From assembly GCF_006345805.1 (NCBI RefSeq), contig NC_043020.1:14818001-14882000 (forward strand): a DNA stretch of 64,000 nt, in the 5' to 3' direction. Shown piece after piece: positions 298 through 38,255 of the stretch. Under the pieces are notes generated by a model. The model was not told where the DNA came from. It searched no databases and was given only the letters and a program-made list of their open reading frames with translations. The DNA is from Octopus sinensis (Eukaryota). Both the position numbers and the translations under genes were made by a program. How positions within the stretch are numbered: the stretch's first letter is position 1; each line of letters starts with the position of its first letter.

Positions 298-386
298 TCT
301 GTAACACGAGGGTCAAGGTTACCAATCCATAGTCTGCACTGGTCGGCAGCATTAGGATCTTGAGGTGGTGCTGGGAGATAAGTTGG
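298..386 (-). CDS. RBM18: RNA-binding motif protein 18, coding exon 2 (PTYLPAPPQDPNAADQCRLWIGNLDPRVT+GA); gene continues beyond the left edge
   Basis: Minus strand reads TTGCAG|CCAACT...GTTACAGA|GTAAGT, 89 nt (29 codons + 2). RLWIGNLDPRVTE matches the RBM18 RRM start (human HRLWIGNLDPKITE). Not in the ORF track. Confidence 0.88.
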
Positions 387-537
387 CTGCAAGAGCAAAA
401 TATAAGATTACATAGTGTTCACAACTTGGTAGACAACATTTTAAAACTAAAATGTAGAAGAATAAGGATCTGCACTTGTGAACGAGGAAGTTATTGTCTT
501 TGATCCAAATCCGAATTAAACAAAATAACAATCACTT

Positions 538-940
538 TACTCTTTACTCTTTTACTTGTTTCAGTCATTTGACTGCGGCCATGCTGGAGCACCGCCTTTA
601 GTCGAGCAAATCGCCCCCGGGACTTATTCTTTTGTAAGCCCAGTACTTATTTTATCGGTCTCTTTTGCCGAACCGCTAAGTGACGGGGACGTAAACACAC
701 CAGCATCGGTCGTCAAGCAATGCTAGGGGGACAGACACACAAACACACACATGCATATACATATATACATATATACGACAGGCTTCTTTCAGTTTCTGTC
801 TACCAAATCCACTCACAAGGCATTGGTCGGCCTGGGGCTATAGCAGAAGACACTTGCCCAAGATGCCACGCAGTGGGACTGAACCCGGAACCATGTGGTT
901 GGTTAGCAAGCTACTTACCACACAGCCACTCATGCGCCTA
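538..940 (-). mobile_element. SINE family A, full length (~400 bp)
   Basis: Same head plus (GTAAAAGA)n-like tail. Further copies at about 11978-12392(+), 19895-20290(+), 31855-32195(+), 42393-42800(+), 45682-46040(+), 53030-53248(-). Confidence 0.88.
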
Positions 941-1309
941 GCTATGTTCCTTTACACAAACACAAAATTTTTCAGATATCTAGAGTCATTTTATGGTGAA
1001 CTTATTTACTTTGTGATGTTTAGGAAATGCTTATTTTTATGCCAGGAATGTAAATAAAATTTTAAATATTTATTTGTCAAAACCAGCCCATTTTATTTCC
1101 AAAATTATTATATATATTTTCATCATTTGTAAAGGAGTGGCAACATCTATTTCTGAAGACTGTTATGCATTTTCCTATTTTAGTTATGTTCTGAGTTTAA
1201 AGACTACTTTCATCTTTTCACCAGAATGGTTAAAATAATTATCAATCAAGTATCAGGAAAATTATATTAACTACACCCCTCTAACATCATTATTTGGGCC
1301 AGAATTTGA

Positions 1310-1870
1310 AACCATTAAGGTGTCGAACTTGGAGAATCGTTAGCCCGCCGGGCAGAATGCTTAGCGGCATTTCGTCCGTCTTCACGTTCCGAGTTCAAAT
1401 TCTGCTGAGGTCGACTATGCCTTTCACTCTTTTGGAGTCGATAAACTAAATACCTATTTCTTTATTACCCACAAGGAGCTAAACAAGGACAGACACAGGT
1501 ATTAAAGTCGATTACATCGACCCCAGTGCGTAACTGGTACTTAATTTATCGACCCCGAAAGGATGAAAAGCAAGAAGTTGATATAATCGACTTGCCCCCA
1601 TCCCGAAATTGCTAGCCTTGTGCCAAAACTTGAAACTATTATGACATTATTATTAATGGCTTAAATTTTGGGACACGTCTAGCAATTTAGGAGGGGGTAA
1701 ATCGATTACAACAACCCCCAATACTTGACTGGTACTATATCTTGTTGACTCCGAAAGGATGAGAGGCAAAATTGACCTCGGCGAGATTTGAACTCAGAAC
1801 GTAAAGAACCAAAAATGCTGCTAAATATTTGGTCCGGAGCTGATGATTCTGCCAGTTCATCGCCTTAATA
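1310..1870. mobile_element. SINE family B copies (head GGCGGCGAGCTGGCAGAA, body GAGTTCAAATTCCGCCGAGGTCGAC)
   Basis: A/B-box-like head; about 20 decayed copies in the window, e.g. 5590-5810, 10515-10720, 11295-11500, 12415-12620, 13790-13994, 20335-20505, 29805-30035, 35320-35850, 44480-45003, 61310-61570. Confidence 0.8.
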
Positions 1871-2413
1871 ACAACAACAACAATAATAATTAATAAAATA
1901 TGAGTCAGGACTTCAAGCATTAATTAATTAAAGCAGTGAGTAGAGAGTGATTTTTTTTTTAATTTAAAGTTTCTACCCCAGCAGCCTATTACTGGGATAA
2001 ACAGTTAATAGTAGTCATTATAATTCATTTAGCTTACGTCGACCAGAAACAATAATTCACACAGCTTGCTGTAGGATTTCAATTCGCAACCCTATTGTCT
2101 GAAAGATTGACACAAAGCTGTAAGTTGTTGAGAAATAGTAATGATTCAACACAAGTGTATTCTATTTTACTGACCCTGAGAAGGTGAAAGACAACGGAGG
2201 CCTTCGGGAAGATTTGAACTCAGACGAAAAGGTTCGAAATAAGATTAAACGAGCAATGTCTATTGTCTGTCTGCCAAACACCGCAAGGACAACACGAAAT
2301 TTTTTATCAGAAATCTCTTGGTCCTTCCTTTGAAATATTTTCAAATATCATTTCAAGTTCCTATAATATAAGAAAATGTGTAAAGAATGATATAATTAAG
2401 GAGATAAACTTAC

Positions 2414-2428
2414 CATGTCCGAAGTCAT
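2414..2428 (-). CDS. RBM18: RBM18 probable first coding exon (MTSDM)
   Basis: Minus strand ATGACTTCGGACATG|GTAAGT: an ATG followed by a consensus phase-0 donor, in frame with the phase-0 exon at 298-386, in unique CpG-containing sequence. Confidence 0.7.
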
Positions 2429-2900
2429 TTCACAACGAATTGTGAAGGGTTTACAAAAACATTTCTTAATTACAAACAAAAGCCTTTAAAAAAAGAACAA
2501 GGAGATCAAAATCAGTCGCAATTCTCTCTATTATGGCTTTTTTTAATGGCTTAGCTAAATATCTCATAAATATTTGTTTTAGTGATGGTAAAGCAGCTAA
2601 TATAAGGTTTAATTTTGTGGTTTATATTTAAATGAAGAGAAAAGTAAAAGAATTTAAAGAGAAAATATTTTAAAGTAGTCAAGTTGGCAACGTGTAAAGC
2701 TATCAACTATATTTAGTTTGGTATTTAGTAATTCATCTTTTTTGTTTGGATTAATATTAATAACAGCAATAAGAATAATTAGTTATTATAATTAGTTTTA
2801 TTTCTTTAAAACACTATTTGATTTATAAAGACTTATTTAACCTCCGATTCAATTCTACGCAGCGTCAGAGTGAATTACATGTAAATACAAAACTAGTGCT
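2429..2900. promoter_or_regulatory. Candidate bidirectional promoter / first-exon region shared by RBM18 and MRRF
   Basis: Non-repetitive interval just upstream of the RBM18 ATG. MRRF ATG is only 3 nt after an acceptor (7115), so an upstream 5'UTR exon is implied; candidate donor ACAT|GTAAAT at 2881. Inference. Confidence 0.45.
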
Positions 2901-3799
2901 AGCCAAACATTTAACATGTGCCCCTCGGTCAGTAATTTTGGTTTCTCTTGTCAAAGTTTTTAGCTTTTATTATGTAAAAACATTTGTTCTTACATTTCTT
3001 TAATTTGATAAACGTGACGAAACATAGTGGAATCAGAAACTTATTGCTTGAATATATGTCATATATATTATTAGAAATAATTTGCAAGTTTTGCCCTTGA
3101 CAGGTTTCTTGTTTCGCTTGTTTTGATAAGTTCTTTACTTGCAATAACTTCATTATCGCTTAGTCCTAAGTCAGATCTATAATCAAAGGCGTTTCAGCGG
3201 TGACCATCCCATCTTATTTTCATGCATAATGAATCATGAACTGTATTATCAAAATGTGTTTTTCTTGTTTTGAAGTGTAATTGTAGGAAAGTTTGTCTGC
3301 TAGGTCGAGCGACAACATTGCGGCTTCGTTTCCTCGTGGAATAAAATATTTATTTATATTCATTAAATATAAGTAATTGCTTCACCTTTGTAAACCAAGC
3401 TATCAATGAAGAGGTGATCCATTCTCAAAACCACCAAAAAAACAGAGAATTCAAATTATAAATACTGCGACCGGTGGATGAGGTTGTCTCACCGCAGGTC
3501 AGCTTCCAACCCAGTAGACTCATAATCAAAGACGTCTCGACCGTGACCATCCCATCTTTTTAATTACACAGTGTATATAGGACTGAATTGTCCAACGCGT
3601 TCTTCCTCTTTTATACAGCAGAGTGTAATTTGAAGGAAATTTGGCTGTTTTTTCTAGCAGCTCGAGTTACCACCTTGAGGCTATTTACTGTGTCCTTGAG
3701 TGGTAGAAACGTCCACCGGCGTCGATGCAATAATATTTTACAGTATTTGTCTTTCATTTCTCCATATTGCACCTTGATCGATGAGATTAAGAAGTACCT

Positions 3800-4400
3800 A
3801 ACTTGAACTGAGATATTTTTTGCCGTACATTCCCCCCAAACATCTATTGTCTTGCGCAAGAATGAAAAACCAAAACAAGCGAGCCCTAACTCGGGTTAAT
3901 ATCCCTTCAATTCTGGATCCCGTGGGATGGGAAGAGACCAGATAGTCTTGCCCTTTTTTTCCTGGGTAAGAGGTAGGTGCCTCATCTTGAACGTCATAGT
4001 CTATAACTTCCTTGCATCTTCCCACATTCTAGATACCTCAGTAAATGGGAAGGTCTCTGCTTCCCTAGCCGAACGGAACAAATTCCTTAAGTATCGAGAC
4101 TTGTCAGTGGACCATTTCTTTCAGTCAGTGGCGTTTGAGACGTTTGGAGGTCCTGGACCAGTAACAACGAAGTTCTTGTCGTTGGCGGCTCGCCTTACCG
4201 ATGAATCAGGTAGTGCCCGTGAAGGTGCTTGGCTGTTCCAACGCCTTAGCCTCGCCATCTCCAGTGGTAAAGCCGTGAGCGTGTTGGCTTGCTTCAGTTG
4301 GTTCTGTTGAACCTTGTAGTGTGTGACCAATTAAGGCACTTAGTGTTGAATTGATGTTTTTTTTCTTTCTTCACTCATGTTTGTGATTTCTTCAATGTTG
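3800..4400 (+). mobile_element. CRE-clade non-LTR retrotransposon 3' fragment (restriction-like endonuclease domain)
   Basis: Decayed HLLSC..., SWVRGRCLI, AERNKFLKYRDL, VAFETFGGPG, WLFQRLSLAISSGKAVSVL match the CRE RLE pattern (PW.RGRCL.WD...KY..L...AVET.G.WG...LFQRLS.AIQRGNA.SV). Confidence 0.8.
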
Positions 4401-4639
4401 TATTTGCATTTTAATGTTCTTTTTAATTTTTTAAAGAGAAATACTAAGTAAGGTTTTTTTATTTTAATATATAACATAAACATGTACATCTTTTAGAACA
4501 TTGTCATTTTATAAGATTTTGTTGGCTAATTTTTTAATTAACATAAACATTTATTTACAAGAAAGAAAATTACCAGAGAACTCTCATCTAATTCTTCCAA
4601 ATCTTTCTGTTAAAACTGTATTTAAACTATTTGTGAGGA

Positions 4640-5230
4640 ATTTTTTTTTTTTATCACAGCAACTGGTCGCACACCACAAGATTTAACAGAACCTACCAAA
4701 GCAAGCCAGAACGCTTGCAGCATTACTTTGGGCGATGGCAACACTAAGGTGTTGGGAAAACTAAACGTCCTCATGGGCACACCTAACACCTTGGTGAGGC
4801 GAGCTGCCAACGTTGACAAGAACTTCGCGGTATGTGGCCCAGTCCCTCCGAACATCTTAAACGTCACAGGTTGGATGAGATAGTTCACTGTCAGGTCCCA
4901 ATACTTCAAGGTTTTATAACATTCGGCTGCAGAAGCAGTGACCCTGCCATTAACTGCAGCGTCCAGGATGTGGGAGGGAACGAAGGAGTCGCAGACTGTG
5001 CGTTTTCAATGAGGCACCTACCTTTAACCCAGGGTTAGAGGGTAAGACTATCTGGTCTCACTCTGGATAACCTGATGGCTCCAGAACGGAAGGGATATTA
5101 ATCCAAGCCAGGCACCTGCTTAATGATTAGGTTTAGCTCTGTGTAATGAGCAAAGCGGCCAGCATTTAGGTGGCAGGACAGAGTATGAAGACCTGTGGGG
5201 TCGAAGGGCCTACCATAGCGGAATTTTGGT
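4640..5230 (-). mobile_element. Second CRE-clade RLE fragment, inverted relative to the first
   Basis: Homologous peptide (FGGTGPHTAKFLSTLAARLT), PWVKGRCLI-like segment, A-rich tail at about 4641-4652. Confidence 0.78.
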
Positions 5231-6184
5231 CTTAATGTGGTTTTGTATTATAAATGTATCATATAAATGTGTATTATATAGCTATATAATAAAATAAAAT
5301 AAACCCTAAAAAAATGAACATTATTACAATGATTTCTAACATAGGCACTGGATCACATTTTCAGAGGAAAAAAAATTGTTAATGTTTTTTTTTTTTATCT
5401 TGAGGAAGGGTCCATTTCTATGAAATCATTGTTGTTACTGTCTTGGTATGTTACAGTATAGTTCTGGTCATTTACAATACCAGTGGACACACTTGTGCAT
5501 TAAATACTTATGATTGAACAACAAAACAATCTGAAACTCAATAATTGTTTATCTTCACAACACTCATGACTTTTGCCAAACCTCTGAGATTTTGCTTTCA
5601 AATTTTGGAACAAGGTCGGTAATTTCAAGGGAAGGAACAAGTCAATTACATTGACCTAAGTACTTAACTGGTACTTATTTTATCGACTCTGAAAGGATGA
5701 AAGGCAAAGTCAACCCTGGTGGCATTTGAACACAGAATGTAAAGTCAGAAGAAATACCACTAAACATTTTTCCCGGCATGATAATGATTCCGTCAGCTCT
5801 CAACCTTGACATCACTGAATATTCTAAAGCATGTTGTTCAGTGCTCTGTCTATTCTGCTATCCACTGTTCTAACAAATAATTATTTCTAATGTAGACCAG
5901 CAGTTTTGAGGAGAGGGTTTTAATCAATACCATCCATCCCCAATACTTAACTGGTTCTTATTTTATCGACTCAGAGAGATGAAAGGATAAGTTGACCTTG
6001 GAAATATTTGACTCAAGAGCCAAACATTTTCCCCAATATGCTAATGATTCAGCCAATCCACCAGTTAACTACTCTTATTAATAATGGTTTCAAATTTTGG
6101 CACAAGGCCAACAATTGTGAGGTGGGTAGTTAGTGCCATCAACCCCAGTAATTGTCTGGTACTTTATTTTATTGACTACTACTA

Positions 6185-6470
6185 CTACGCAGTCGAGAGA
6201 TCGCGGGTTCGAATCTCAGACAGGGCGATGTGTGTGCTTAGCTCCATGCGGCTCTGGCAGAAGGTAATGGTGAACTTCTGCTGACTCTTTTGCCACAACT
6301 TTCTTTCACTCTTTCCTCCTGCATCTTGCAGCTCACCTGCAACGGACCAGCATCCTGTCTAAGTGGGGAACCTATACGCCAAGGAAACTGGGAAACCGGC
6401 CCTTATGAGCCAGGCATGGCTCGAGAAGGAACAAACAACTACTACTACTACTACTACTACTAATAATAAT
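6185..6470 (+). mobile_element. 5'-truncated tRNA-derived SINE with (CTA)n/(AAT)n tail
   Basis: B box GGTTCGAATCT, tail GAAGGAACAAACAAC followed by microsatellite. Confidence 0.6.
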
Positions 6471-6554
6471 AATAATAATCCTTTGAACTCAGAATGTAGC
6501 ATTTCTCTATCACTACCACAGCTGTTGCTACTACTACTATTACTACTATTAAAA

Positions 6555-6710
6555 CACCCTCCGGTCATGAATGTGGGTGGGAGCAAAGGAGTCGCAGACT
6601 GTGCATCCCAAATGAGGCACCTACCTCTAACCCACGGTCAGAGGGTAAGACCATCTGGTGTCACTTCTGGGTAACACTGATGGCTCCAGAACTGAGGAGA
6701 TATTAGTTCT
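6555..6710 (-). mobile_element. Third CRE-clade RLE fragment
   Basis: Minus strand encodes SVLEPS...(P)DGLTL.PWVRGRCLIWDA with frameshifts. Confidence 0.75.
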
Positions 6711-7118
6711 CCTCCAAGGCACAAGTCTGGGCAAGGTTGTTTATAGAAGACAAACAGTCACCCATGTATACCAGCCTCCCCTCTCCACACCACCAATGTT
6801 ATCCAAGGGAAAGGCAAAGGTCAAGCTGGGCACTGGTGACATTGCAACTCATTTCTAAAGCTGAGTGAACTTGAGCAATGTGAAAATAAAGTGTCTTGGT
6901 CAAGAATACAACACATGGACTGGTCTAGGAATCGAACTCACTACATCGTGATTGTGAGCCTGATGCTCTAATCTTGTAATTAACATACCAACATCTTGAT
7001 TACTGACCCAACTATAAACTTTCTCTCTTAAATAATGTAAGGGCCTCAGGAATAATAATATATTGCAGGTTTTAATCAACCAGTTTAAAAATTTCCTTTT
7101 TATACTATATTGCAGATT

Positions 7119-7359
7119 ATGAATACATGGAGGGTTTTATGGCGACTACAGACTGGTCTCTTTTCAAAGGTACAACCTGCTTTTATCCAGAAATTTCCTT
7201 CCACTTTGACATCATTCAATAACAGGAGACAGATGTTATGTATGTTATCCAAATGTCATGGAAATATTGATCCAAGATCCAGTGTCTCACTAACTGCATC
7301 ATACAACTGGTGTCATATCCGTGAATATGCCAAAGCTTCCAAATCTAAGAAGAAAACAA
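7119..7359 (+). CDS. MRRF: Mitochondrial ribosome recycling factor, coding exon 1 (targeting peptide, MNTWRVLWRLQ...IREYAKASKSKKKT)
   Basis: TTGCAG|ATT ATG at 7119; donor A|GTAAGT at 7360; basic presequence with almost no acidic residues; phase 1 fits the next exon. Confidence 0.85.
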
Positions 7360-9010
7360 GTAAGTGTTCAATTTATTTTCATTCTTCATTCGTTATTTAC
7401 TAGTTATAATTATTTGTCTGGGGTGGATCTCCAAATAAGCAAAACATTACTGCAGAAACCGGTTAGGACATTCTGTGAATGTTGTTCTTTGAATCAGTTA
7501 TTTAGAACTCTTGTTGAGTGTTCTTCCATGAATCAGGTAAATGATTATTGGATAGCTAGAAATGAGAGAATTCCATTTATGTTTGTTACTAAGGATGGTA
7601 CAGCCCCATCACTATTCAATGGTAATAGTACACCCTCATATTTATAAAATACAATTTACAAACTGGATGGTATTTCCCCCTCACTGTTCAATGGTGCACC
7701 CTCAGGTTTAGAAAATACAGCTTACACAAATCTTCCTATAATACAAATTAGTGCCCACCCAGAATATTCTGAAGTACCCTCAGGTAGGCACCTAAGTCTA
7801 GCAATGAGTCTGGTCGCATTAGCCAATGTAATTCTCTCTTTTCGTGATGATAAGGTGTAATTTGATTGCTATTTCTAGAAAATCTAGCATTCACCCAAAG
7901 AGGATGAAAAACAAAATTGAACTCACAATGTAAGGAATATTGGTTACAGGTGTTGGTACAGGGCCGGCAGTTTTGGGGAAAAGGGTAAGTTGATTACATC
8001 AACCCTAGTCTAGTACTCAACTAGTACTTATTTTATTGAGCCTGAAACAGTGGCGGCTCATGTATAAGAACTGCAGTACCCCCTATTTCCACTTGATATT
8101 ATTGATAACATTCAATATAATGAGTCCTTTTTTCTTTAAATCTTTCTTTATACTTGTGCATTATATAATGTTTAAGCTTAATGTCAGCAGCCATCCTCTA
8201 GTTTATGAAAAAAATCCTTGTATAGAACTGGGTACTTCACAGTTCCAGTGATGTGGTGTTTGGCTCACATGTCCAAGATAGGAAGCTTCACACTAGGAAG
8301 AGAGATCATTGCATGAATGACAGTGCCGGGTGAAAGATAGTGTTTCTTTTTGACTCTGCATGTGTTGTGCTTAAAAACATGTTTATATTCTTGAATGTGA
8401 TAAAGTATAGAATTAAATTATTATCCTGCTTCCAGCTTCAGTGTTGCTGCCAGGATTTGAAAAATAGGGCACATTTCTCCCCCCTTGTTTTGTGATTTAG
8501 TGAGGATTTTTGAAAAACAAGGGGGAATTCACAGTGATGTTCAGTGAACAAATTAAACACACTTCTCGACAGTGGCTAAAACATGAACCGATCAAGTTTA
8601 TGCATAAATTTTCGTTTTATATGTTTGTTTCTTTTTACACAATATTAAAACAACAGCTAAAAATTTTCTGAGGCAGCACCCCAACAAATTTTATCTACAA
8701 GTTGCCACTGTTCTGAAAGTCACCAAAGTCAACTTTGGTGATATTTAAACGCAGAATGTGAAGAGGGATAAAATGCTGCCCTGCATGCTAACAATTCTGC
8801 CAGCTTGCTGCCTTAACTAGAATAAATATTATAGAATATTTCCTCTGATGCTTTAATTTTTTAAGATTCCAGTAATTTGGTTTCCTTTCTCTTTATCAAC
8901 AATTCCTCAAATTTCATCAATAAAAGGTAAAACTAATAAACATTTGCAAATGACTTTTTGAAGACTGTTCCTTTTGGAAGGTTCTCAGAAATTCCTTTTT
9001 CTGCTAGCAG

Positions 9011-9148
9011 GTAAACCAAAAGTGTTTGTTAGTGATGACCAAATGGAGGAGGTAATAAATTTGACAGCTTTCAAATCCGAAATGTCTAGTGTGTTGGAAC
9101 AGCTTCAACTGGATTACTTAAATCAACTTTCTCTCAGAGTATCCACCC
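9011..9148 (+). CDS. MRRF: MRRF exon 2 (KPKVFVSDDQMEEVINLTAFKSEMSSVLEQLQLDYLNQLSLRVST); alternative start 9008
   Basis: Pyrimidine tract plus TAGCAG tandem acceptor; donor C|GTAAGT; RRF helix ending LSLR. Confidence 0.9.
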
Positions 9149-9969: not shown

Positions 9970-10088
9970 GTGTTTTTGATACAATTACTGTGAAAATAGA
10001 AAATAAAGAGTTTCGTCTCAACCAAATTGCTCAAATTATCCAGAAGAATCCATCTTTGATAGTGATTAATTTAAGGGAGTCAACTCAG
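9970..10088 (+). CDS. MRRF: MRRF exon 3 (VFDTITVKIENKEFRLNQIAQIIQKNPSLIVINLRESTQ)
   Basis: TTTCAG|GT...CAG|GTTTGT, 119 nt, phases 1 to 0; RRF domain II motif (LNQIAQI). Confidence 0.92.
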
Positions 10089-12703: not shown

Positions 12704-12795
12704 TATTTGCCAATAGTGAAGAATGCAATCATTAAATCAGGAGCTGCCATAAACCCTCAAGTGGATGGAACAACTATTTTTATTCCAATACCAAA
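12704..12795 (+). CDS. MRRF: MRRF exon 4 (YLPIVKNAIIKSGAAINPQVDGTTIFIPIP)
   Basis: CTCCAG|TAT...AA|GTAAGA, 92 nt; AIxxSG..NP..DG..I.IPIP RRF signature. Confidence 0.93.
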
Positions 12796-17337: not shown

Positions 17338-17497
17338 AGTCTCAAAAGAACATCGTGAAAAGCTCTGCAAATCTGCTAAGACATTTTGTGATAAAAGTAA
17401 GCAGAAACTGCGTGAAATTTGCAATAGATATACAAAGAAATTGAAAGCTAGCAAAGGCGCCTTCTCAGAAGATTTAATTATAAATATTCAAGAATCG
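17338..17497 (+). CDS. MRRF: MRRF exon 5 (VSKEHREKLCKSAKTFCDKSKQKLREICNRYTKKLKASKGAFSEDLIINIQES)
   Basis: GTTTAG|A...TCG|GTAAGT, 160 nt; EHRExL.K and SED motifs of RRF. Confidence 0.93.
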
Positions 17498-19644: not shown

Positions 19645-19731
19645 TTGATACATCAGATGCAAGGGAAGATGACAGAAGCCGAGGAGATGATGGCACGGAA
19701 ACAAAAAGATTTGTTAGGAGACCAGAAATAA
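19645..19731 (+). CDS. MRRF: MRRF last coding exon (LIHQMQGKMTEAEEMMARKQKDLLGDQK*)
   Basis: ATGCAG|TTG...TAA; RRF C-terminus KxKxLL. Summed CDS is 837 nt (840 with the alternative acceptor) with no stop. Confidence 0.9.
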   Translation: MIHQMQGKMTEAEEMMARKQKDLLGDQK

Positions 19732-24524: not shown

Positions 24525-24619
24525 TAATTTTAATGAGTTTAGATTCTTTAAAATAAAACTATATAGTGTACTACTATTTCTTACAAAAATGTAATTTTTT
24601 CAAGAATAATTTTTTTCAA

Positions 24620-24680
24620 TTAAGGACTGGTATCTTGTCTGTAGAGATGTTCAAAGGAATAGTCAGCAGTTGGCTGTAAC
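24620..24680 (-). CDS. PHYHD1: PHYHD1 last coding exon ((W)LQPTADYSFEHLYRQDTSP*)
   Basis: ATACAG|G TTA CAG CCA...TAA; completes the NWLQP motif of PHYHD1. Confidence 0.92.
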
Positions 24681-24982
24681 CTGTATAAACAGAAAGAATT
24701 TAAGAAATAGTTTTAGCCAGCTGAGAAGATTTGAGTTAGAATACTGAAAAAATCAACATAAGTACCAGATATATCTGATTATTATTGGGTGAAAGTTTCA
24801 GAACTGTAGTAAAATAGGAAATTAGAGTTTCCCGTTTACTTAAGTATGTTGTTGTTTAGCCTGGTCATCATTCATACAGCAGAGCTATGATTAACAGCGT
24901 TCATTCTTTCTTAACCCTCCCTGACCAGAGCCCTTGTATCTAACTTTACTTTCCACCTGGGCTCATGAGCAAAAAATAAATA

Positions 24983-25385
24983 GGCGTAGGAGTGGCTGTG
25001 TGGTAAGTAGCTTGTTTACGAACCACATAGTTCCAGGTTCAGTCCCACTGCATGGCACCTTGGGCAAGTGTCTTCTACTATAGCCTCGGGTCAACCAAAG
25101 CTTTGTGAGTGGATTTGGTAGACAGAAACTGAAAGAAGCCCGCCGTATATATGTATATATATATGTGTGTGTGTGTGTATGTTTGTCTCCCCCCCCCCTC
25201 CCAACATCGCTTAACAACTGATGCTGGTGTGTTTACGTCACCGTAACTTAGCGGTTTGGCAAAAGCGATCGATAGAATAAGTACTAGGCTCACAAAGAAT
25301 AAGTCCTGGGGTCGATTTACTCGACTAAAGGCGGTGCTCCAGCATGCCCACAGTCAAATGACTGAAACAAGTAAAATAGTAAATA
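24983..25385 (+). mobile_element. SINE family A
   Basis: A/B-box head, microsatellite middle, GTAAAA tail. Confidence 0.88.
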
Positions 25386-27384
25386 GTAGTAGTATAGCTG
25401 CATATACGGCTCAAGAGTAATGATTGCAGGCCAAGTAATGGACAGAACTGGCTGCACCTTCTTTTTCTATGTGTGTTGTTCAAGACCACTTTACCAGGAA
25501 TCCAGCAGATATGACATTTAACCTTTTCTCACTGTAGTAGGAATATGGCATGACAGGGTTAAAGTCAATAGTGTGTGATTTAAGAGATATTTAGTTGCTA
25601 TTTGTTGCAGGTTAAGTAACTATGGAGCGGTTCCCTTGTTGGCTCAGTTATTTAGCAATATATGTATTTTAGAATTATTTTACTTGAACAATCAAAACTG
25701 AATCACATAATTTGTTGAATGAGAGTTTAGTTCCACTGTTGGTGACATTGCAAATCTACCCAGAACACTCTGTGAAGTGGTCAATGAATAAAGCAAGACA
25801 TGGCATCAAGAGGACCCTTTAGGCTTGGTTAAATCACTAGTGCTAGGTACCATGAAAAAAATGTACCCAATACATTCTGTAAAGTAGTTGGTGTTAGGAA
25901 GGGCATCCAGCCATAGAACCACACCCTGAAAATGAAAGTGCCAATTTGAACCATGGTAACCAGTTCGTCCTATACCTGTATGGTATGGGTTGGATGTTTA
26001 GAATAGTTTAACTCTTTGTAGTGTATAATGCCGCTCTACAGTGGTGTTCATTCCTCCTCAATAGTGAAATATAGCAACATTCTGCAGTTGAGTTTATCTC
26101 CTCTCTGTTTGCTCAATCAGGTCTAAGTTTCCTTCTTGAGTCATACTGACTCATAAGGGCCAGTTTTCTGGTTTCCATGGCGTATATATTCCCTACTTGG
26201 ATGGGATGCCGATCCATCATAGGATTACTTATTTTTGCCAGCTGAGTGGACAGGAGCAACGTGAAATGAAGTCTTTTGTTCAAGAACACAATGCATCGCC
26301 TAATCCAGGAATCGAAACCACAATCTTATTATGACGAGTCCAACACCCTAACCACTAAGCCATGCACCTCCACTCAATCAAGTCTGACCTGAGGTGAAAT
26401 AACATCTTACTAAAGGATCTGTATGAATGCAAAAAATCTTAGTTGGTAACTGTAGTTGCGTTGCAGTATTTGACCAATTTAAACACTGCACCACAACATA
26501 AACAAGTGCTATGATGGAGTAGAGCTTAACTCTGCATATAATAAAAGTACCTTACAAGGTACTTTTGCATCACAAAAGGAAGCTCAGCATTCAGGTGGCT
26601 TATGTTTCTATAACCAAAGCCAGAAACTGTATAATATAATGTTTCAAAATATATTGAAAAATTTTTTAAACTTAACACAAGATTCCTTCAGTGTATTGAT
26701 CTTTTCTTTTAAGTTACACAATCAATAGCAATTGTATTTCCAGTCATAGTTGTGGCCAGTGCTGGTGACACGTGAAAGGAACCTGTGCTGGTAACTCATA
26801 AAAGGCACCTGTGCTGGTGACTCATAAAAGGCACCTGTGCTGGTGACATGTAAAAGGCACCTAGTACACTCAGTCGAGTGGTTGATGTTAGGAAGGGCAT
26901 CCAGCTGTAGAAACTAAGCCCAAACAAACAAATGGAGCCTGGTACAGCTACTCCAGCTTACCATCTTCAGTCAAACTGTCTAACCCATGCCAGCATGGAA
27001 AATAGACGTTGATGATGATGATGATGATGATGAAGCCTAATAATACACTCTGGTCACACACTTATTGTTTATTTAGGGTTAACCAATGGACTTCTCAAAC
27101 TGAAAGTTGAAAAGATCAACAGTTTTAAACCTTTCATCAATGCTCAACTTGATCTGTCATGATAACATTTAAACACTGCACCACAACATAAACAAGTGCT
27201 ATGACAGAGGAGAGCTCAACTCTGTATATAATAAAAGTACCTTACAAGATTGAGCCAGAACCCTTCCAGGTCTCTAGAAACAGCAAACCTAGAATCCATT
27301 CTAGTCGTGTGTGGTACCTCTTTGGGTTAACGGACATTAATCTTTATTCTTCAATTAACCTCCATTAGCAGCATACTCTCCAGA

Positions 27385-28430
27385 TCTATGAACATTGATG
27401 ACAAAGTCAAAATATGCATCACAAAGGGAAGCTCACCATTCAGGTGGCTACATGAATCAGTATGTGAGAGGAGAGGCATTAAGCTGGCCACCAAGTTGAA
27501 GGTGTACCAAGCAGTTGTACTACCTACACTACTGATTACCTATGAGACTGGAATGGTTTATGAATCCCACACCAAACAGCTAAACCTATTTCTTTACTAC
27601 CCACAAGGGGCTAAACACAGAGAATACAAACAAGGACAGACAAACGGATTAAGTCGATTATATCGACCCCAGTGTGTAACTGGTACTTTATTTTTCGACC
27701 CTGAAAGGATGAAAGGCAAAGTCGACCTCGGCGGAATTTGAACTCAGAACGTAGCGGCAGACGAAATACCTATTTCTTTATTACCCACAAGGGGCTAAAC
27801 ATAGAGGGGACAAACAAGGACAGACATAGGTATTAAGTCGATTACATCGACCCCAGTGCGTAACTGGTACTTAATTTATTGACCCTGAAAGGATGAAAGG
27901 CAAAGTCGACCTCGGCGGAATTTGAACTCACAACGTAACAGCAGATGAAATACCGCAAAGCATTTCACCTGGCGTGCTAACGCTTCTGCCAGCTCGCTGC
28001 CATATGAACTGCCTGAGAAATCTGTTGAAAATCACCTGGCAGGACAACATCCCAGACACGAAGATCCTCTTTTGAGCTGATCTGCCAAGCATGTACACAC
28101 TACTAAGGTGAGTGCAAGTTAAATAGGCAGGTCACCTTTGTTCGAATGCCTGACACACGACTACCCAAAAGACTGTTTTACAGTGAGCAGGCATAGCTGC
28201 ACCAACAAAGGTGTCACCTCCTACAAACAAAACCAGATCGCAGGAGCACAAGGAAAACGTGAGCTGTGCAAGTTCAGGACCAACTCCTTGCCTTCATTCC
28301 CAGTGGGCCACCAGTGCCCAACTTGCAGCCAAACCTGATGAGCACACATCAGCCACAGCCAGACTCACCATGACCCATCTTCTCCCCATATGATGTCCTG
28401 GGTCATCGACAACAATGCACAAACCATAAT
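27385..28430 (+). mobile_element. RTE-type LINE fragment interrupted by a SINE family B dimer (~27586-28003, minus strand)
   Basis: GIKLATKLKVYQAVVLPTLL before, and CLRNLLKITWQDNIPD...RMPDTRLPKRLFY after the SINE pair. Confidence 0.8.
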
Positions 28431-28454
28431 TAAAATCAGTCAAGAATAATAAAC

Positions 28455-28626
28455 AGGCGCAGGAGTGGCTGTGTGGTAAGTAGCTTGCTAACCAACTACA
28501 TGGTTCCGGGTTCAGTCCCACTGCGCGGCATCTTGGGCAAGTGTCTTCTGCTATAGCCCCGGGCCGACCAATGCCTTGTGAGTGGATTTGGTAGACGGAA
28601 ACTGAAAGAAGTCTGTCGTATATATG

Positions 28627-28659
<33 letters not shown>

Positions 28660-28866
28660 TTGTGTGTCTGTGTTTGTCCCCCTAGCATTGCTTGACAGCC
28701 GATGCTGGTGTGTTTACGTCCCTGTCACTTAGCGGTTCGGCAAAAGAGACCGATAGAATAAGTACTGGGCTTACAAAGAATAAGTCCCGGGGTCAATTTG
28801 CTCGACTAAAGGCGGTGCTCCAGCATGGCCACAGTCAAATGACTGAAACAAGTAAAAAGAGTAAAA
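28455..28866 (+). mobile_element. SINE family A, young-looking, ending ~20 bp from a PHYHD1 donor
   Basis: Near identical to copies at 538-940 and 32300-32708. Confidence 0.9.
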
Positions 28867-28885
28867 AAGGGTAATTTATACAAAC

Positions 28886-29012
28886 CAGTTTTTGGAGCAG
28901 TATTCACTTTTGCCTTTGTCGTACATGTGGAATGTGTAAGCATGCCTAGATTCTGAAGAGACATTCTTCTCACTTCTGTGAACAACCAGTCCATGTATAA
29001 GAACAAGTGAAC
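28886..29012 (-). CDS. PHYHD1: PHYHD1 exon (GSLVLIHGLVVHRSEKNVSSESRHAYTFHMYDKGKSEYCSKNW)
   Basis: TTCCAG|GT...TG|GTTTGT, 127 nt; carries the distal Fe-binding His (VVHRS) and the 2-oxoglutarate-binding Arg (SRHAY). Confidence 0.95.
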
Positions 29013-30182
29013 CTGGAATAAATCAGGAAATAAAGAAATCCACTTTAGAGTTTGTAGTTATTGCATGTGATATGTAATATAACAAGTAAAATATTGGTTG
29101 CCAATGACAGTCAAATTAAGATCTCAATACAGTGAGGTAAAAAAATCCAATTAATTAATAATAATTATTTAGTGATGGGAAGCAAAATGAGTTCCAAGTA
29201 TAATATAAATTTGAATCTGATTTTGGCAAGTAAGGGAGACAACTCTGAACATATTTCAGCCTTAGTAGACCTCATCAAGAAAGAATAGACTTCTATATAT
29301 TAGTCAGATTAATGCAAGGACAATCACTACACGAACAGCAGTCTGTGTGGATGTGTGTGACTTGTTGCGAAGTAAGTCAATTCTGTAACACCTCAGCTGC
29401 TGGCTACTACATAGAACTATTTTTTCTAATAATTTCCCTTTCAGATACATTAAAAAATTATAGAGAACAAAATATTTTAACAACTAGAAACAAGTTATTT
29501 AATAATAATCCTTTCTTCAATAGGAACAAGGCCTGAAATTTTCTGAGATGGAGGCTTCTCAATTTCATTGTCCCCAATGCTCAACTAGTACTGTTTATAT
29601 TGACTATGAAAGGATGAAAAGTTAAGTCTACTACAGCAGAATTTGAAATCAGAACATAAAGCCAAAAGAGATGTTGTGAAGCATTTCGTCCAGCATGCTA
29701 ACGATTCTGCTAGCTCACTGCCTTACTACAAATTATGGTAATGAGCTTATTGTATTCAGTGCTCAAGTGTGTTACAACAGGTCAACTTTGACTGAGCAGA
29801 ACTTATTTCTTTATTGCCCACAAGGGGCTAAACATAGAGGGGACAAACAAGGACAAACAAACGGATTAAGTTGATTACATCGACCTCAGTACATAATTGG
29901 TACTTAATTTATCGACCCCAAAAGGATGAAAGACAAAGTCGACCTCGGCGGAATTTGAACTCAGAACGTAACAGCAGACGAAATACGGCTACGCATTTCA
30001 CCTGGTGCGCTAACGTTTCTGCCAGCTCGCCACCTTTGACTGAGCAGAACTGTGACTGAAAACACTCCAGCCTTAAGCTAACATCTAATGCAGATATCTA
30101 GGACTTCATTATCTAATGTGTCTTGCTACCTAATATTTTTTTACGCTGCTTTTGCAGATTCCCATACCTCTCTGTTACCATT

Positions 30183-30880
30183 CAGTTCCATTATGAATTA
30201 GAATTGGGACCTTGATTCATAGTGAATCTTTCACTAGCTAATTGCACAACCATGGACGCCACCCCTATCGATGTGTTGCAGTTACTCTCTTGATAGAGCT
30301 TGCTGATCCTGACTATTGATGTTGTAGGATTCCTCTGCTCAGCATCAATGTAAGAACCACTGTTGGCGCAGTTGGGATCTTCTGCTAACTCTTCACAATC
30401 TACCATGCTGCAGGCCCATGACTTTGCCCTATCCTTAGCAGGGTGGCTGAATGGGTGGCGGCGAGCTGGCAGAACCATTAGTACGCCGGGCAAAATGCTC
30501 AGCAGTATTTTGTCTGTCGCTACGTTCTGAGTTCAAATTCCACTGAGGTTGACTTTGCCTTTCATCCTTTCGGGGTCGATTAAATAAGAACCAGTTACGC
30601 ACTGGGGTCGATATAATCGACTGTCTGTCGCTACGTTCTGAGTTCAAATTCCGCCGAGGTTGACTTTGCCTTTCATCCTTTCGGGGTCGATTAAATAAGT
30701 ACCAGTTACGCACTGGGGTCGATATAATCGACTGAATCCGTTTGTCTGTTCTTGTTTGTCCCTTCTGTGTTTAGCCCTTTATGGGTAGTAAAGAAATAGG
30801 TATGCCTTGCCAAAGGGCAACCTGTAACTATACAGGTTCACTCCATGAGGTATTTTCAAAATATCCGCATACACGTACCT
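30183..30880 (-). mobile_element. Unclassified interspersed repeat split by a SINE B insertion (~30456-30800); second copy at ~40725-41040(+)
   Basis: Shared blocks CTGCAGCATGGTRGATTGTGAAGAG, TTCTTACATTGAWGCTGAGCAGAGG, CCCTTTGGCAAGGCATA. Confidence 0.65.
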
Positions 30881-31076
30881 AAGCTAATAAGGTGTTATTC
30901 TAGAGCAATTTTGGTTGCTATTCTAGCCATTTAAGTGACTGAATAGAAATGTTATTTCACAGAAAAGTAATTAGTTTAATTACATCTATTCATTCTAATT
31001 AAGTTGTTCATGTTCTTGAAAAAAACGAGAGTTACTTTATACTTTATCTTGTCTTCAGTTCTAAATCTGAGTTATG

Positions 31077-31400
31077 TGAAGGCATATGGCTTAGTGGTTA
31101 AGGTATTTGACTCATGATCGCTAGATGGTGAGTTCGATTCTTGTCAGCAAATTGTGCCTTTGAGTAAGACGCTTTATTTCATGTTGTTCCAGTCCACTCA
31201 GCTGGCAAAAATGAGTAGAACCAGTATTTCAAAGGGCCAGCCTTGTCACATTCGGTGTCGCACTGAATCTCCCTGAGAACTACATTAAGGGTATGTGTGT
31301 CTCTGGAATGCTCAGCCACTTACATATTAATTTCATAAGCAGGCTGTTCTATTGATCAGATCAACTGGAACCCTTGTCATCGTAATTAAGGGAGTGCTAG
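31077..31400 (+). mobile_element. tRNA-derived SINE family D
   Basis: TGGCTTAGTGG A box, GAGTTCGATTC B box; related copies at 6710-6970(-), 26090-26375(-), 41700-41975(-), 45027-45415(+), 49810-50050(-), 51165-51405(-). Confidence 0.75.
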
Positions 31401-31544
31401 TTTTATTTTATTTCATTTTATTTATTTATTTAAAAAAATATTTTTATAAATCTGAGTTGTGATGTGAAAAATGTAAAAAATGAAAACTTTATTATAGTGG
31501 TTGTCTTTGAATTAAAGAAAGCAGACAAAATATATCAGAATAAC

Positions 31545-31664
31545 CTTTTTCTACTTCAATATCTTTGAAATCTTTGTCTTCATAAGTGGGGGGAGTTCCA
31601 ACCATGATAGTTCCATGTTCAGTGTCAGGGTTCAGCACCATCCTTTGGTCATTGTGAAGGCCAC
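31545..31664 (-). CDS. PHYHD1: PHYHD1 exon (SGLHNDQRMVLNPDTEHGTIMVGTPPTYEDKDFKDIEVEKG)
   Basis: AATTAG|GT...G|GTTATT, 120 nt, phases 1/1 match both neighbours. Confidence 0.88.
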
Positions 31665-31805
31665 CTAATTGAAGACAGATTATAAAGAGAAAACAGGTTT
31701 CTGGTTGAACTTTTACAGATGAAATTTCACATAGAATAACTTGTCAATTTGGGGTTAAGTTGATTTGGAATTTCTTTTTGTGCAACGAAAATTACATACA
31801 AACAG

Positions 31806-31844
<39 letters not shown>

Positions 31845-32299
31845 TACATTGATAGGCACAGGTGTGGCTGTGTGGGAAGAAGCTTGCTTCCCAATTACAT
31901 GATTTTGGGTTCAGTCCCACTATGTGACACCTTGGGCAGGTGTTTTCTACAATAGCTTCAGGCCAGCCAAAGCCTTGTGAGTGGATTTGGTAGACAGAAA
32001 CTGAAAGAAGCCCATCATGTGTGTGTGTGTGTGTTTGTCTTCCACCATCACTTGACAACTGGTGATGGTGTGCTTTAGTTCCCATAACTTAGCAGTTCAG
32101 CAAAAAGAGACCAATAGAATAAGTACCAAACATAAGCTAAAAATAAGAACGGGGATCAATTCGTCTGATTAAAACTTCTTCAAGTCAGTGCTCCAGCATG
32201 GCCACTGTAAGAGGTCTTGCCTACTTGTTAATGTGATGAAACTTTATTATGAGAGACTTAGAGAGGCAGAAAAAGGGGAGCTACTAAAAGTTAGTAAAA

Positions 32300-32708
32300 C
32301 AGACGCAGGAGTGGCTGTGTGGTAAGTAGCTTGCTAACCAACCACATGGTTCCGGGTTCAGTCCCACTGCGTGGCATCTTGGGCAAGTGTCTTCTGCTAT
32401 AGCCCCGGGCCGACCAATGCCTTGTGAGTGGATTTGGTAGACGGAAACTGAAAGAAGCCTGTCGTATATATATATATATAAGTGTGTGTGAATATGTTTG
32501 TGTGTCTGTGTTTGTTCCCCTAGCATTGCTTGACAACCGATGCTGGTGTGTTTACGTCCCCGTCACTTAGCGGTTCGGCAAAAGAGACCGATAGAATAAG
32601 TACTGGGCTTACAAAGAATAAGTCCCGGGGTCGATTTGCTTGACTAAAGGCGGTGCTCCAGCATGGCCGCAGTCAAATGACTGAAACAAGCAAGTAAAGA
32701 GTAAAGAG
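32300..32708 (+). mobile_element. SINE family A
   Basis: Full-length, CpG-retaining copy. Confidence 0.9.
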
Positions 32709-32922
32709 ACACAGAAATAATGAACAAGACAGAGATACAGTGAAAGAGATTGAAGGACAGAAATAGTGAAAGAAAAACGATAAGGAATGAAAAATCTAGA
32801 ATTTATTTATTTAGTTTTGTAAGACAATTCTATTCAGATTAATTACATTGAAATTTTCATTAATTTCCTCATCTATTTTTTAATCTTTCCTCTCTTTTAA
32901 AAAAAGTCTCCTCTCAATAATT

Positions 32923-33320
32923 TGTAACAGGATCTGTATCAATTCACTGAAAGGGTGTCGATCCGATCCAGTCACATACAATTTAGTAAGACATAACAGA
33001 CGAAGTCAGGTTATAGGTGAAAGACAGCAGTTCGTTTATTAATTGCGATGGCGTACGTGTATCTGATGGGAGAACGACAGCCTCTGATGTACAGCTTCTT
33101 CTTGTTCGTTTGTTGAAGTGGTTCGATGTCGTTCGCGGCTAAGTCGGTGAGGTTATCAGAGTCCACAAAATGCACGTCTGTTCGCGCTGGCCGTCTGCCC
33201 AGAGAGAATGATTTGAGTTTAGCGGGCCTAAGGGATCGTTTCCCGCATATGCGCATGGGGAAGACTTCCGGTGGCCACCCGGAAGTAGTCCCATTCTGCG
33301 CATGCGCGCTGAACCCTACA
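32923..33320 (-). mobile_element. Probable solo LTR (398 bp, TGT...ACA), CpG-rich
   Basis: Minus strand TGTAGGG...GTTACA; GC/CpG-rich 5' third, AATAAA at 33040-33035; no TSD found. Confidence 0.65.
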
Positions 33321-33803
33321 CAGTAGCATCACTTCAAATTTCTACAAATTTTCTACATTTTCTGTTCCATATTAGCTTGAGTTGGGTTGGATTATAATCC
33401 AACTCCAAATTATAATTATAATTAAAATTTTCATAGAGCAGGGAGATGTGTTTACTAAGCAGACTACACAGTAACTCATTTATGTGTAATGCTAAGATCA
33501 TGCAATCATTTTGATGATATGCAAACGTGGCAGATATTGATGAACAAGACAAGCTTCATGCAAGGTGAAGTCAATAAAAGTGTTCCTTATTAATTTATGG
33601 CCTTGTACTGAAGAAATAAATAAAACATGACATACTAATACTCTAAAATATTCAGTAAAACAACTAATAACGTCTCATAATCTGTGGTTTGTTAGAGACT
33701 TCATGGATTTGTGAATTTGGAGCAAAGCTAACTGAAAGGAGTTCCTTCCCCTTGAAAATATTTGAACTCATCATTGAAAGCTAATTTAATATGGATGAAT
33801 TAA

Positions 33804-36019: not shown

Positions 36020-36246
36020 TTAACCCTTTAGTGTTCAGATTATTCTATCAAACATAATGCTTATTGATTCCCATTGATTTGAATTAATAATGCATTATCT
36101 CATATCTTCAAGATCTTGATGGTGTAATTACTTAATGTAGAATAACATTGTAGGGTAAGTGTGAGAGCCTGGATCTGGTCAGTTTGAACATAAAACAGAT
36201 TAACTATTTCGGCCGGATATGGCCGGTTTAAATACTAAAGGGTTAA
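36020..36246. mobile_element. piggyBac-type MITE, second family (TTAACCCTTTAG...CTAAAGGGTTAA)
   Basis: Copies also at about 51880-52106 and 52197-52424. Confidence 0.85.
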
Positions 36247-36779: not shown

Positions 36780-36905
36780 TTTTATGTGATCCAGGTATGT
36801 ATGCCAAACATCCATTTTCCCGAGTGGCATTTTGTAAAGGAAACCAGAAACCTAAAAGACTCATTGGTTCTGTATACAGGTATGTGCTGTCTTGATGTGC
36901 ATTCA
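36780..36905 (-). CDS. PHYHD1: PHYHD1 exon ([42 protein letters not shown])
   Basis: TTGTAG|TG...A|GTAAAT, 126 nt; HQD iron-binding motif and ENGCL..IPGSH PhyH signature. Confidence 0.96.

Positions 36906-38225: not shown

Positions 38226-38255
<30 letters not shown>

What the first reader, a model, noticed from the sequence alone, without database searches (positions are those of the whole stretch)
298..7359. RBM18 and MRRF are head-to-head here, as in human
Seen: two minus-strand exons missed by the ORF track splice in frame to MTSDM-PTYLPAPPQDPNAADQCRLWIGNLDPRVTE, and MRRF starts on the plus strand 4.7 kb away. Known: human RBM18 and MRRF are divergently transcribed neighbours at 9q33.2. 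Inference: the pair predates the protostome-deuterostome split and survived the heavy coleoid genome rearrangement, suggesting a constrained shared promoter linking an RRM protein to mitochondrial translation.
Basis: partly seen in the sequence, partly recalled or inferred. Interest (0 to 1): 0.72.

Follow-up and report, generated by a model that had tools for sequence, protein, structure and literature searches.

The report
Octopus RBM18–MRRF divergent gene pair
In this octopus sequence the genes RBM18 and MRRF sit head-to-head with start codons only about 490 bases apart, an arrangement also seen in humans, amphioxus, a scallop, a ribbon worm and a millipede, so it is a real but ordinary example of an anciently conserved divergent gene pair.

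Summary
Minus-strand exons 2428-2414 and 386-298 splice in frame to the first 35 residues of annotated octopus RBM18 (100% identity). The plus-strand exon ending at 7359 belongs to MRRF. All seven MRRF coding exons lie in the window and reproduce Octopus sinensis isoform X3 exactly.

One correction. The ATG at 7119, 4.7 kb away, starts only isoform X5. Isoform X3, O. bimaculoides X2 and an Argonauta model start at a 12-nt mini-exon (2916-2927), 487 bp from the RBM18 ATG. The 4.7 kb is mostly MRRF intron 1, partly repeats.

In an RBM18-anchored survey, MRRF is head-to-head in O. bimaculoides, Argonauta, Pecten, Lineus, a millipede, amphioxus and hippopotamus. It was not found within 10 kb in a sea urchin, a crinoid, an acorn worm and two annelids. 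A bilaterian origin with several later losses fits best.

Published tables already list the human pair as divergently paired, and as a potential bidirectional promoter in 8 vertebrates. Squid retain about 275 ancient microsyntenic blocks, so survival in coleoids is not unusual.

A shared bidirectional promoter is plausible. Nothing supports a functional link between RBM18 and mitochondrial translation. Interest is low.

The parts
2414..2428 (-). RBM18 coding exon 1 (MTSDM). It is followed by the donor GTAAGT at 2413.
   Evidence: Identical to the N-terminus of annotated RBM18 (P0001, P0149). The same 5-codon exon plus donor is present in Argonauta.
387..2413 (-). RBM18 intron 1 (2,027 bp, phase 0), containing SINE-like repeats.
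   Evidence: Canonical GT...AG boundaries. A repeated SINE-like sequence occurs at ~600-960 and again at 1-240.
298..386 (-). RBM18 coding exon 2 (PTYLPAPPQDPNAADQCRLWIGNLDPRVT + GA of a Glu codon). It carries the RNP2 part of the RRM, and the donor follows 298.
   Evidence: tblastn 100% over 30 aa, E = 2e-16. The motif RLWIGNLD.R.TE is conserved, most of its positions invariant, in 11 RBM18 orthologues from 7 phyla. The intron position is conserved from scallop to mammal.
2429..2915 (.). Interval of 487 bp between the RBM18 ATG and the MRRF isoform-X3 ATG. This is the candidate bidirectional promoter plus both 5' leaders. It is AT-rich (26% GC) and has no CpG island.
   Evidence: It is unique sequence with no repeat copies elsewhere in the window. 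Identity to O. bimaculoides is 94.7%, against 89-93% in the flanking introns, but the difference is not significant (p = 0.24).
2457..2471 (-). Block AATTAAGAAATGTTT, conserved between Octopus and Argonauta ~30 nt upstream of the RBM18 ATG. It contains the start of a 3-codon upstream ORF (MFL-stop, 2462-2451).
   Evidence: The peptide is the same in Argonauta from different codons (ATGTTTCTATGA). Only two lineages were compared, so its significance is unproven.
2916..2927 (+). MRRF coding mini-exon 1 (MCPS) of isoform X3, with donor GTCAGT.
   Evidence: O. bimaculoides isoform X2 (P0141) starts the same way. An equivalent ATGTGC... 12-nt exon plus GT donor is present in Argonauta. Argonauta has no ATG at the exon-2 position that octopus isoform X5 uses.
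2928..7115 (+). MRRF intron 1 (4.2 kb). It carries repeats between 3890 and 6971 and two annotated alternative 5' coding exons: 4201-4209 (isoform X4, MNQ) and 4773-4829 (isoform X2, MGTPNTLVRRAANVDKNFA).
7116..7359 (+). MRRF coding exon 2. It encodes a presequence-like N-terminal region.
   Evidence: The first 60 residues have 8 K+R and 1 D+E.
9008..9148 (+). MRRF coding exon 3, with a tandem acceptor at 9008/9011.
9970..10088 (+). MRRF coding exon 4.
   Evidence: The Pfam RRF match covers residues 127-280 of the protein, i.e. from the end of exon 3 through exon 7.
12704..12795 (+). MRRF coding exon 5.
17338..17497 (+). MRRF coding exon 6.
19645..19731 (+). MRRF coding exon 7, including the stop codon.
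24617..52677 (-). PHYHD1 orthologue, convergent with MRRF (approximate extent taken from exon hits). It forms part of the same conserved neighbourhood.
   Evidence: tblastx to the PhyH genes next to MRRF in Argonauta, amphioxus and millipede. The joined exon peptides give Pfam PhyH 1.3e-30 and human PHYHD1 (2opw) 1.7e-53.

Best explanation
The window is Octopus sinensis DNA carrying the 5' end of RBM18 (minus strand) and the whole of MRRF (plus strand), transcribed divergently from a short interval. The two start codons are 487 bp apart. This is an inherited bilaterian gene pair of the bidirectional-promoter type.

The likely mechanism is that the two core promoters lie back-to-back or overlap, as in human. 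A rearrangement breakpoint between them would then cut at least one broadly needed gene from its promoter. The target for such a break is also tiny. The adjacency therefore persists over hundreds of millions of years, although it can be lost and has been lost in some lineages.

Shown here: gene identities, exon structures, orientation, start-codon spacing and the phylogenetic distribution. Inferred: the transcription start sites, promoter sharing, and selection as the cause of retention.
For: - Gene identities and exact models.
- Start codons are 487 bp apart in the window and in O. bimaculoides, and 551 bp apart in Argonauta.
- MRRF lies head-to-head next to RBM18, with these distances between coding starts: 209 bp in Lineus, 798 bp in amphioxus, 1,495 bp in Pecten, 1,613 bp in a millipede and 7,683 bp in hippopotamus. 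The orientation was checked by tblastn.
- Human transcription starts overlap, at -237 or -183 bp (PMC12672016 and PMC3815023 supplements).
- The pair is listed as a potential bidirectional promoter in 8 vertebrates (PMC2871058 Table S5).
- General rule: conserved ancestral pairs are enriched for 5'-5' orientation and short spacers (PMC3514665).
- The chance that two given genes are adjacent in a genome of about 20,000 genes is about 1e-4 (my estimate). Repeated head-to-head adjacency in five phyla is therefore inheritance, not coincidence.
Against: - No transcript, CAGE or chromatin data were available, so the transcription start sites and promoter sharing are not shown.
- No transcription-factor motif from a panel of 17 is shared across phyla in the spacers.
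- The octopus spacer is not significantly better conserved than the neighbouring introns between two Octopus species (p = 0.24).
- The pair was not found within 10 kb in Lytechinus, Antedon, Glandiceps and Paralvinella. In Lamellibrachia another gene faces RBM18. Separation is therefore tolerated.
- MRRF has several annotated alternative 5' exons, so some transcripts may start elsewhere.
Confidence: 0.7

Rival explanations
1. The adjacency is retained passively. It is ancestral but kept without selection for co-regulation, simply because a spacer of a few hundred bases is a very small target for breakpoints. The two promoters work independently.
For: - The pair has been lost in several lineages without loss of either gene.
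- No sequence motif is shared across phyla.
- The octopus spacer shows no significant excess conservation.
Against: - The head-to-head orientation is retained in every positive lineage, across five phyla.
- Conserved ancestral pairs as a class are enriched in 5'-5' orientation and in co-expression (PMC3514665), which argues for regulatory constraint in general.
Confidence: 0.22
2. The linkage exists because RBM18 acts in, or is co-regulated with, mitochondrial translation, so the shared promoter couples the two functions.
For: - Only the adjacency itself and its age.
- Some conserved divergent pairs are functionally related, for example HSPD1-HSPE1 (PMC3514665).
Against: - The octopus RBM18 N-terminus is acidic and proline-rich (5 D+E against 2 K+R in 35 residues) and is unlike a mitochondrial presequence. 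MRRF has a presequence-like N-terminus.
- Only 58 papers mention RBM18. None of the 15 top-ranked has it in the title, and none describes a mitochondrial role.
- In annelids and ambulacrarians the genes are apart, and in Lamellibrachia RBM18 is paired with an unrelated gene.
Confidence: 0.06
3. The apparent pair is an artefact. Either the short peptide belongs to a different RRM protein, or the arrangement is an annotation or assembly error.
For: Only 35 residues of RBM18 lie in the window, and they found no match among solved structures.
Against: - The peptide is identical to the N-terminus of full-length annotated RBM18 in three Octopus species. The relatives of that protein are all named RBM18, across seven phyla.
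- The intron position is conserved.
- The same arrangement appears in independent assemblies of O. bimaculoides and Argonauta.
Confidence: 0.02

Closest known systems
Human RBM18-MRRF divergently paired genes at 9q33.2
   Same: The two orthologous genes are the same and the head-to-head orientation is the same, with a very short spacer. In human the transcription starts overlap by 183-237 bp (PMC3815023 and PMC12672016 supplements). In octopus the start codons are 487 bp apart.
   Different: The octopus spacer is AT-rich (26% GC) with no CpG island. Octopus MRRF has a 12-nt first coding exon followed by a 4.2-kb intron that is partly repeats and holds alternative 5' exons. In octopus, PHYHD1 lies directly next to MRRF. 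From memory, human PHYHD1 is several megabases away on 9q34.
Conserved ancestral microsyntenic pairs and conserved bidirectional promoters (Irimia et al. 2012, PMC3514665; Davila Lopez et al. 2010, PMC2871058), for example HSPD1-HSPE1
   Same: It is a non-paralogous gene pair in 5'-5' orientation with a short spacer, kept across distant animal phyla.
   Different: HSPD1 and HSPE1 are functionally coupled and have an experimentally shown shared promoter. For RBM18-MRRF neither has been shown. The 2010 table records the pair only in vertebrates. I could not check whether it is in the 2012 list, because that supplement is not held.
Metazoan microsyntenic blocks retained in coleoid cephalopods (Schmidbaur et al. 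2022, PMC9023564)
   Same: It is an ancient linkage that survived the coleoid genome reorganisation. With PHYHD1 it forms a block of at least 3 genes, shared with amphioxus.
   Different: The gene names were not found in that paper's held supplements, so membership in its 275 blocks is unverified.

Membership tests
RBM18 orthologue group | Best relatives are RBM18 proteins rather than another RRM family. | tested here: met
   The 35-aa peptide is identical to the N-terminus of octopus RBM18. That protein's hits, down to 1e-30, carry the RBM18 name across 7 phyla wherever a source gives a functional name.
RBM18 orthologue group | A single N-terminal RRM with the RLWIGNLD.R.TE (RNP2) signature. 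| tested here: met
   The signature is encoded at window 298-386. Most of its positions are invariant in the 11-sequence alignment. Pfam RRM_1 scores 1e-13 on the full-length orthologue. The rest of the domain lies off the window.
RBM18 orthologue group | Conserved intron immediately after ...TE. | tested here: met
   The exon ends at the same residue in Octopus, Argonauta, Pecten, Branchiostoma and hippopotamus.
Mitochondrial ribosome recycling factor (MRRF; Pfam RRF PF01765) | A full-length RRF domain. | tested here: met
   Pfam RRF 5.1e-31, covering profile positions 10-164 of 164.
Mitochondrial ribosome recycling factor (MRRF; Pfam RRF PF01765) | Closer to mitochondrial than to bacterial or chloroplast RRF. 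| tested here: met
   Human mitochondrial RRF chains score 8e-34 to 7e-31. Bacterial and chloroplast RRFs score 7e-13 or weaker.
Mitochondrial ribosome recycling factor (MRRF; Pfam RRF PF01765) | An N-terminal mitochondrial targeting presequence and import into mitochondria. | tested here: inconclusive
   The N-terminal 60 residues are basic and nearly free of acidic residues (8 K+R, 1 D+E), which is consistent. No targeting predictor or experiment was available.
Divergently paired genes / bidirectional promoter | Head-to-head orientation on opposite strands. | tested here: met
   RBM18 is on the minus strand from 2428 downward. MRRF is on the plus strand from 2916 upward.
Divergently paired genes / bidirectional promoter | Transcription start sites less than 1 kb apart. 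| tested here: inconclusive
   The start codons are 487 bp apart for isoform X3, which implies starts less than 487 bp apart or overlapping if these are the first exons. No transcript-end data were available, and other isoforms use other 5' exons.
Divergently paired genes / bidirectional promoter | A shared regulatory element and co-expression. | not testable with these tools
   No RNA-seq, CAGE or reporter data were available. The motif scan across phyla was negative.
Conserved ancestral microsyntenic pair (sense of Irimia et al. 2012) | Adjacency of non-paralogous orthologues in several distant metazoan lineages, including both protostomes and deuterostomes. | tested here: met
   Present in Mollusca (4 species), Nemertea, Arthropoda, Cephalochordata and Vertebrata. 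Not found in 5 other species.
Conserved ancestral microsyntenic pair (sense of Irimia et al. 2012) | Presence outside Bilateria (cnidarians, sponges, placozoans). | not tested

The most novel reading that the evidence does not exclude
PHYHD1, MRRF and RBM18, with a PSMB7-like gene next to RBM18 in octopods, may form one ancestral bilaterian block. On this reading the core MRRF-RBM18 promoter has stayed bidirectional for more than 550 million years, even in an AT-rich genome without CpG islands. Its repeated break-up in annelids and ambulacrarians would then mark lineages in which RBM18 acquired a new promoter partner. That would give a natural experiment on how a bidirectional promoter is split.
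Probability: 0.3. Interest if true: 0.35.

Novelty: new member of a known kind. Interest (0 to 1): 0.2.

Why it matters
The result adds one well-documented case to the several hundred known ancient head-to-head gene pairs. It extends a pair already tabulated for vertebrates to molluscs, a nemertean, a millipede and amphioxus. It also corrects the local picture: the two genes are 0.5 kb apart, not 4.7 kb. The pair could serve as a small, tractable example for studying bidirectional promoters in genomes without CpG islands, and for studying how such pairs break in annelids and ambulacrarians. It does not open a new question. It gives no evidence about RBM18 function, which remains essentially unknown.

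Tried and rejected
1. Solved-structure search with the 35-aa peptide found no hit. The peptide is too short and RBM18 has no matching entry.
2. I scanned the spacers of eight species for 17 promoter motifs (NRF1, YY1, ETS/GABP, CRE, Sp1, CCAAT, DRE, ZNF143 and others). Nothing was shared across phyla.
3. I tested for extra conservation of the 487-bp spacer between O. sinensis and O. bimaculoides. Mismatches were 4.7% against 6.3% in the flanking introns, p = 0.24, not significant.
4. I tried to reach cnidarian, sponge or placozoan RBM18 with a profile of 11 diverse orthologues. The 120 listed hits were all bilaterian, so the pre-bilaterian question stays open.
5. A low-stringency tblastn for an unannotated MRRF in the loci that showed no annotated MRRF (Lytechinus, Glandiceps, Paralvinella, Antedon; Lamellibrachia was fetched in parallel and not included) found nothing. 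A move beyond 10 kb cannot be excluded.
6. The supplement of Irimia et al. 2012 and the Albertin et al. 2015 octopus genome paper are not held. The supplements of Schmidbaur et al. 2022 do not name these genes.
7. I rejected the idea that the 4.7-kb interval is intergenic promoter DNA. It is MRRF intron 1, with repeats and alternative 5' exons.


Full report
**What is in the sequence.** On the minus strand, ATGACTTCGGACATG (2428-2414) is followed by a GTAAGT donor. A polypyrimidine tract and CAG acceptor precede position 386. The exon 386-298 ends at ACAGA|GTAAGT.

I padded this peptide to the length of a full protein and searched it against 5.8 billion proteins. It found two proteins, both named 'probable RNA-binding protein 18'. 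The Octopus bimaculoides protein was 100% identical (E = 1.4e-16) and the Argonauta hians protein 91% identical. The O. sinensis/O. vulgaris RBM18 (P0149) has the same first 35 residues.

The full-length octopus protein has one Pfam RRM_1 domain. Wherever a source gives its relatives a functional name, that name is RBM18, in molluscs, nemerteans, annelids, chelicerates, a millipede, echinoderms, hemichordates, amphioxus and vertebrates. The segment encoded in the window contains the family's RLWIGNLD.R.TE signature, most positions of which are invariant. The intron that follows it sits at the same residue in Argonauta, scallop, amphioxus and a mammal. The remaining RBM18 exons lie beyond the left edge of the window.

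**MRRF.** A search of the exon-2 peptide against 1.84 billion representative proteins returned one strong hit, P0121 (100% identity, E = 2e-48). This is XP_029650656.1, 'ribosome-recycling factor, mitochondrial isoform X3 [Octopus sinensis]'. Seven plus-strand exons with canonical GT-AG borders reproduce it exactly: 2916-2927, 7116-7359, 9008-9148, 9970-10088, 12704-12795, 17338-17497 and 19645-19731. The window is therefore O. sinensis DNA. It is about 92% identical to the O. bimaculoides locus. P0121 matches Pfam RRF at 5e-31, and its best solved relative is human mitochondrial RRF at 8e-34.

**Correction to the '4.7 kb'.** It is the start of annotated isoform X5 (P0142). Isoform X3 starts at a 12-nt mini-exon, ATGTGCCCCTCG|GTCAGT, at 2916-2927. 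That is only 487 bp from the RBM18 ATG.

- O. bimaculoides isoform X2 begins the same way (MCPS).
- The independently annotated Argonauta gene begins with the equivalent ATGTGCGCTTGG|GT exon, 551 bp from its RBM18 ATG.
- Argonauta has Leu (TTG) where octopus exon 2 has its Met. This favours the mini-exon ATG as the conserved octopod start.

The 4.2 kb between the mini-exon and exon 2 is therefore MRRF intron 1. All repeat copies found in 2400-7120 lie between 3890 and 6971, which amounts to 40% of that stretch. Two further annotated 5' coding exons, at 4201-4209 and 4773-4829, sit in this repeat-bearing part of the intron. All four O. sinensis isoforms are reproduced exactly from the window.

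**The spacer.** The 487-bp interval (2429-2915) is unique sequence, 26% GC, with no CpG island. It is 94.7% identical between O. sinensis and O. bimaculoides, against 89-93% for the flanking introns, but the difference is not significant (p = 0.24). Against Argonauta, only short blocks are conserved. The clearest are the MRRF start exon and a 15-nt block, AATTAAGAAATGTTT, about 30 nt upstream of the RBM18 ATG. That block begins a three-codon upstream reading frame encoding MFL-stop in both genera. A panel of 17 promoter motifs showed nothing shared among the spacers of eight species.

**Distribution of the pair.** I anchored on annotated RBM18 genes and read 10 kb on each side. An RRF-domain gene lies head-to-head with RBM18 in seven species. 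Distances are between coding starts, and orientation was confirmed by tblastn.

| Species | Distance between coding starts |
|---|---|
| O. bimaculoides | 487 bp |
| Argonauta hians | 551 bp |
| Pecten maximus | 1,495 bp |
| Lineus longissimus | 209 bp |
| Chamberlinius hualienensis (millipede) | 1,613 bp |
| Branchiostoma belcheri | 798 bp |
| Hippopotamus | 7,683 bp (inflated if the 5' exons are non-coding as in human, which was not checked here) |

No MRRF was annotated within 10 kb in Lytechinus pictus, Antedon mediterranea, Glandiceps talaboti or Paralvinella palmiformis, and tblastn found none there. In Lamellibrachia satsuma a different gene (EURL-like) faces RBM18 at 400 bp.

Presence in three protostome phyla and in chordates, always in the same orientation, makes a bilaterian origin the parsimonious reading. 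Absence in both annelids and all three ambulacrarians shows the linkage can be broken. Non-bilaterians could not be examined.

**What was already known.**
- Supplements of two human divergent-gene-pair studies list RBM18-MRRF at 9q33.2 with overlapping transcription starts, at -183 and -237 bp (PMC3815023 and PMC12672016).
- Davila Lopez et al. 2010 list the pair among potential bidirectional promoters conserved in eight vertebrates (PMC2871058 Table S5).
- Irimia et al. 2012 established that conserved ancestral pairs across metazoans are enriched for 5'-5' orientation, short spacers and co-expression (PMC3514665). Their list is not held here.
- Schmidbaur et al. 2022 found 275 ancient microsyntenic blocks retained in the squid Euprymna, similar to the 216 in a scallop (PMC9023564). 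Surviving the coleoid reorganisation is therefore common.
- RBM18 itself is almost unstudied. It is mentioned in 58 papers, and none of the 15 top-ranked has it in the title.

**Interpretation.** The best-supported reading is an inherited divergent pair with back-to-back or overlapping promoters. Its short spacer makes separation rare, but not impossible.

The passive version, in which the tiny target size alone explains retention, cannot be excluded with these data.

The RBM18 N-terminus is acidic and unlike a presequence, whereas the MRRF N-terminus is presequence-like. The genes are also separated in several phyla.

**Verdict.** The evolutionary inference is supported in outline. The functional inference is unsupported. 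The case is an ordinary new member of a well-known class.

Noticed in passing
window ~24617-52677, minus strand: A PHYHD1 orthologue (Pfam PhyH 1.3e-30; human PHYHD1 structure 2opw 1.7e-53) lies tail-to-tail with MRRF. The same PhyH / MRRF / RBM18 order is present in Argonauta (L002) and amphioxus (L004). A PhyH gene is also within 6 kb of RBM18 in the millipede (L008). This looks like a three-gene ancient block.
   Followed up: partly
L001 21282-27873 and L002 20074-26611 (off the left edge of the window): A proteasome beta-subunit gene with the Pr_beta_C domain (PSMB7-like) follows RBM18 in O. bimaculoides and Argonauta. From memory, human PSMB7 is also on 9q33, which hints at wider conserved linkage.
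   Followed up: no
window 4201-4209 and 4773-4829, plus strand: These are annotated alternative first coding exons of MRRF (isoforms X4 and X2). They lie in the repeat-bearing part of intron 1. The second sits in an ORF whose peptide resembles an inverted copy at 4622-4909, which suggests exonised transposon sequence.
   Followed up: partly
window 9008/9011, plus strand: A tandem CTAG|CAG| acceptor at MRRF exon 3 produces two annotated protein variants (…KKKTTGKPKV versus …KKKTSKPKV). Both forms are annotated in O. sinensis, and the shorter form in O. bimaculoides.
   Followed up: yes
window 2451-2471, minus strand: A 15-nt block, AATTAAGAAATGTTT, is conserved between Octopus and Argonauta just upstream of the RBM18 start codon. 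It contains a three-codon upstream ORF that encodes MFL-stop in both genera, using different codons.
   Followed up: partly
window 1-240 and ~600-960, minus-strand reading: Two copies of an octopus SINE-like repeat (…GGCGCAGGAGTGGCTGTGTGGTAAGTAGCTTGCT…) followed by TG/TA-rich microsatellite-like sequence. One lies inside RBM18 intron 1 and one in intron 2.
   Followed up: no
L012 1-9601: In the tubeworm Lamellibrachia satsuma, RBM18 is head-to-head at 400 bp with a 704-aa EURL-like gene instead of MRRF. The promoter partner appears to have been exchanged.
   Followed up: no
L003 19036-19707; protein P0151: An HSP20 gene is nested in an RBM18 intron in Pecten maximus. A Pinctada gene model (P0151) fuses RRM and HSP20 domains and is probably an annotation merge of the same nesting.
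   Followed up: no
window 63129-63716, plus strand: A 195-aa ORF resembles the C-terminal part of a retrotransposon reverse transcriptase. This is an impression from the sequence and was not searched.
   Followed up: no
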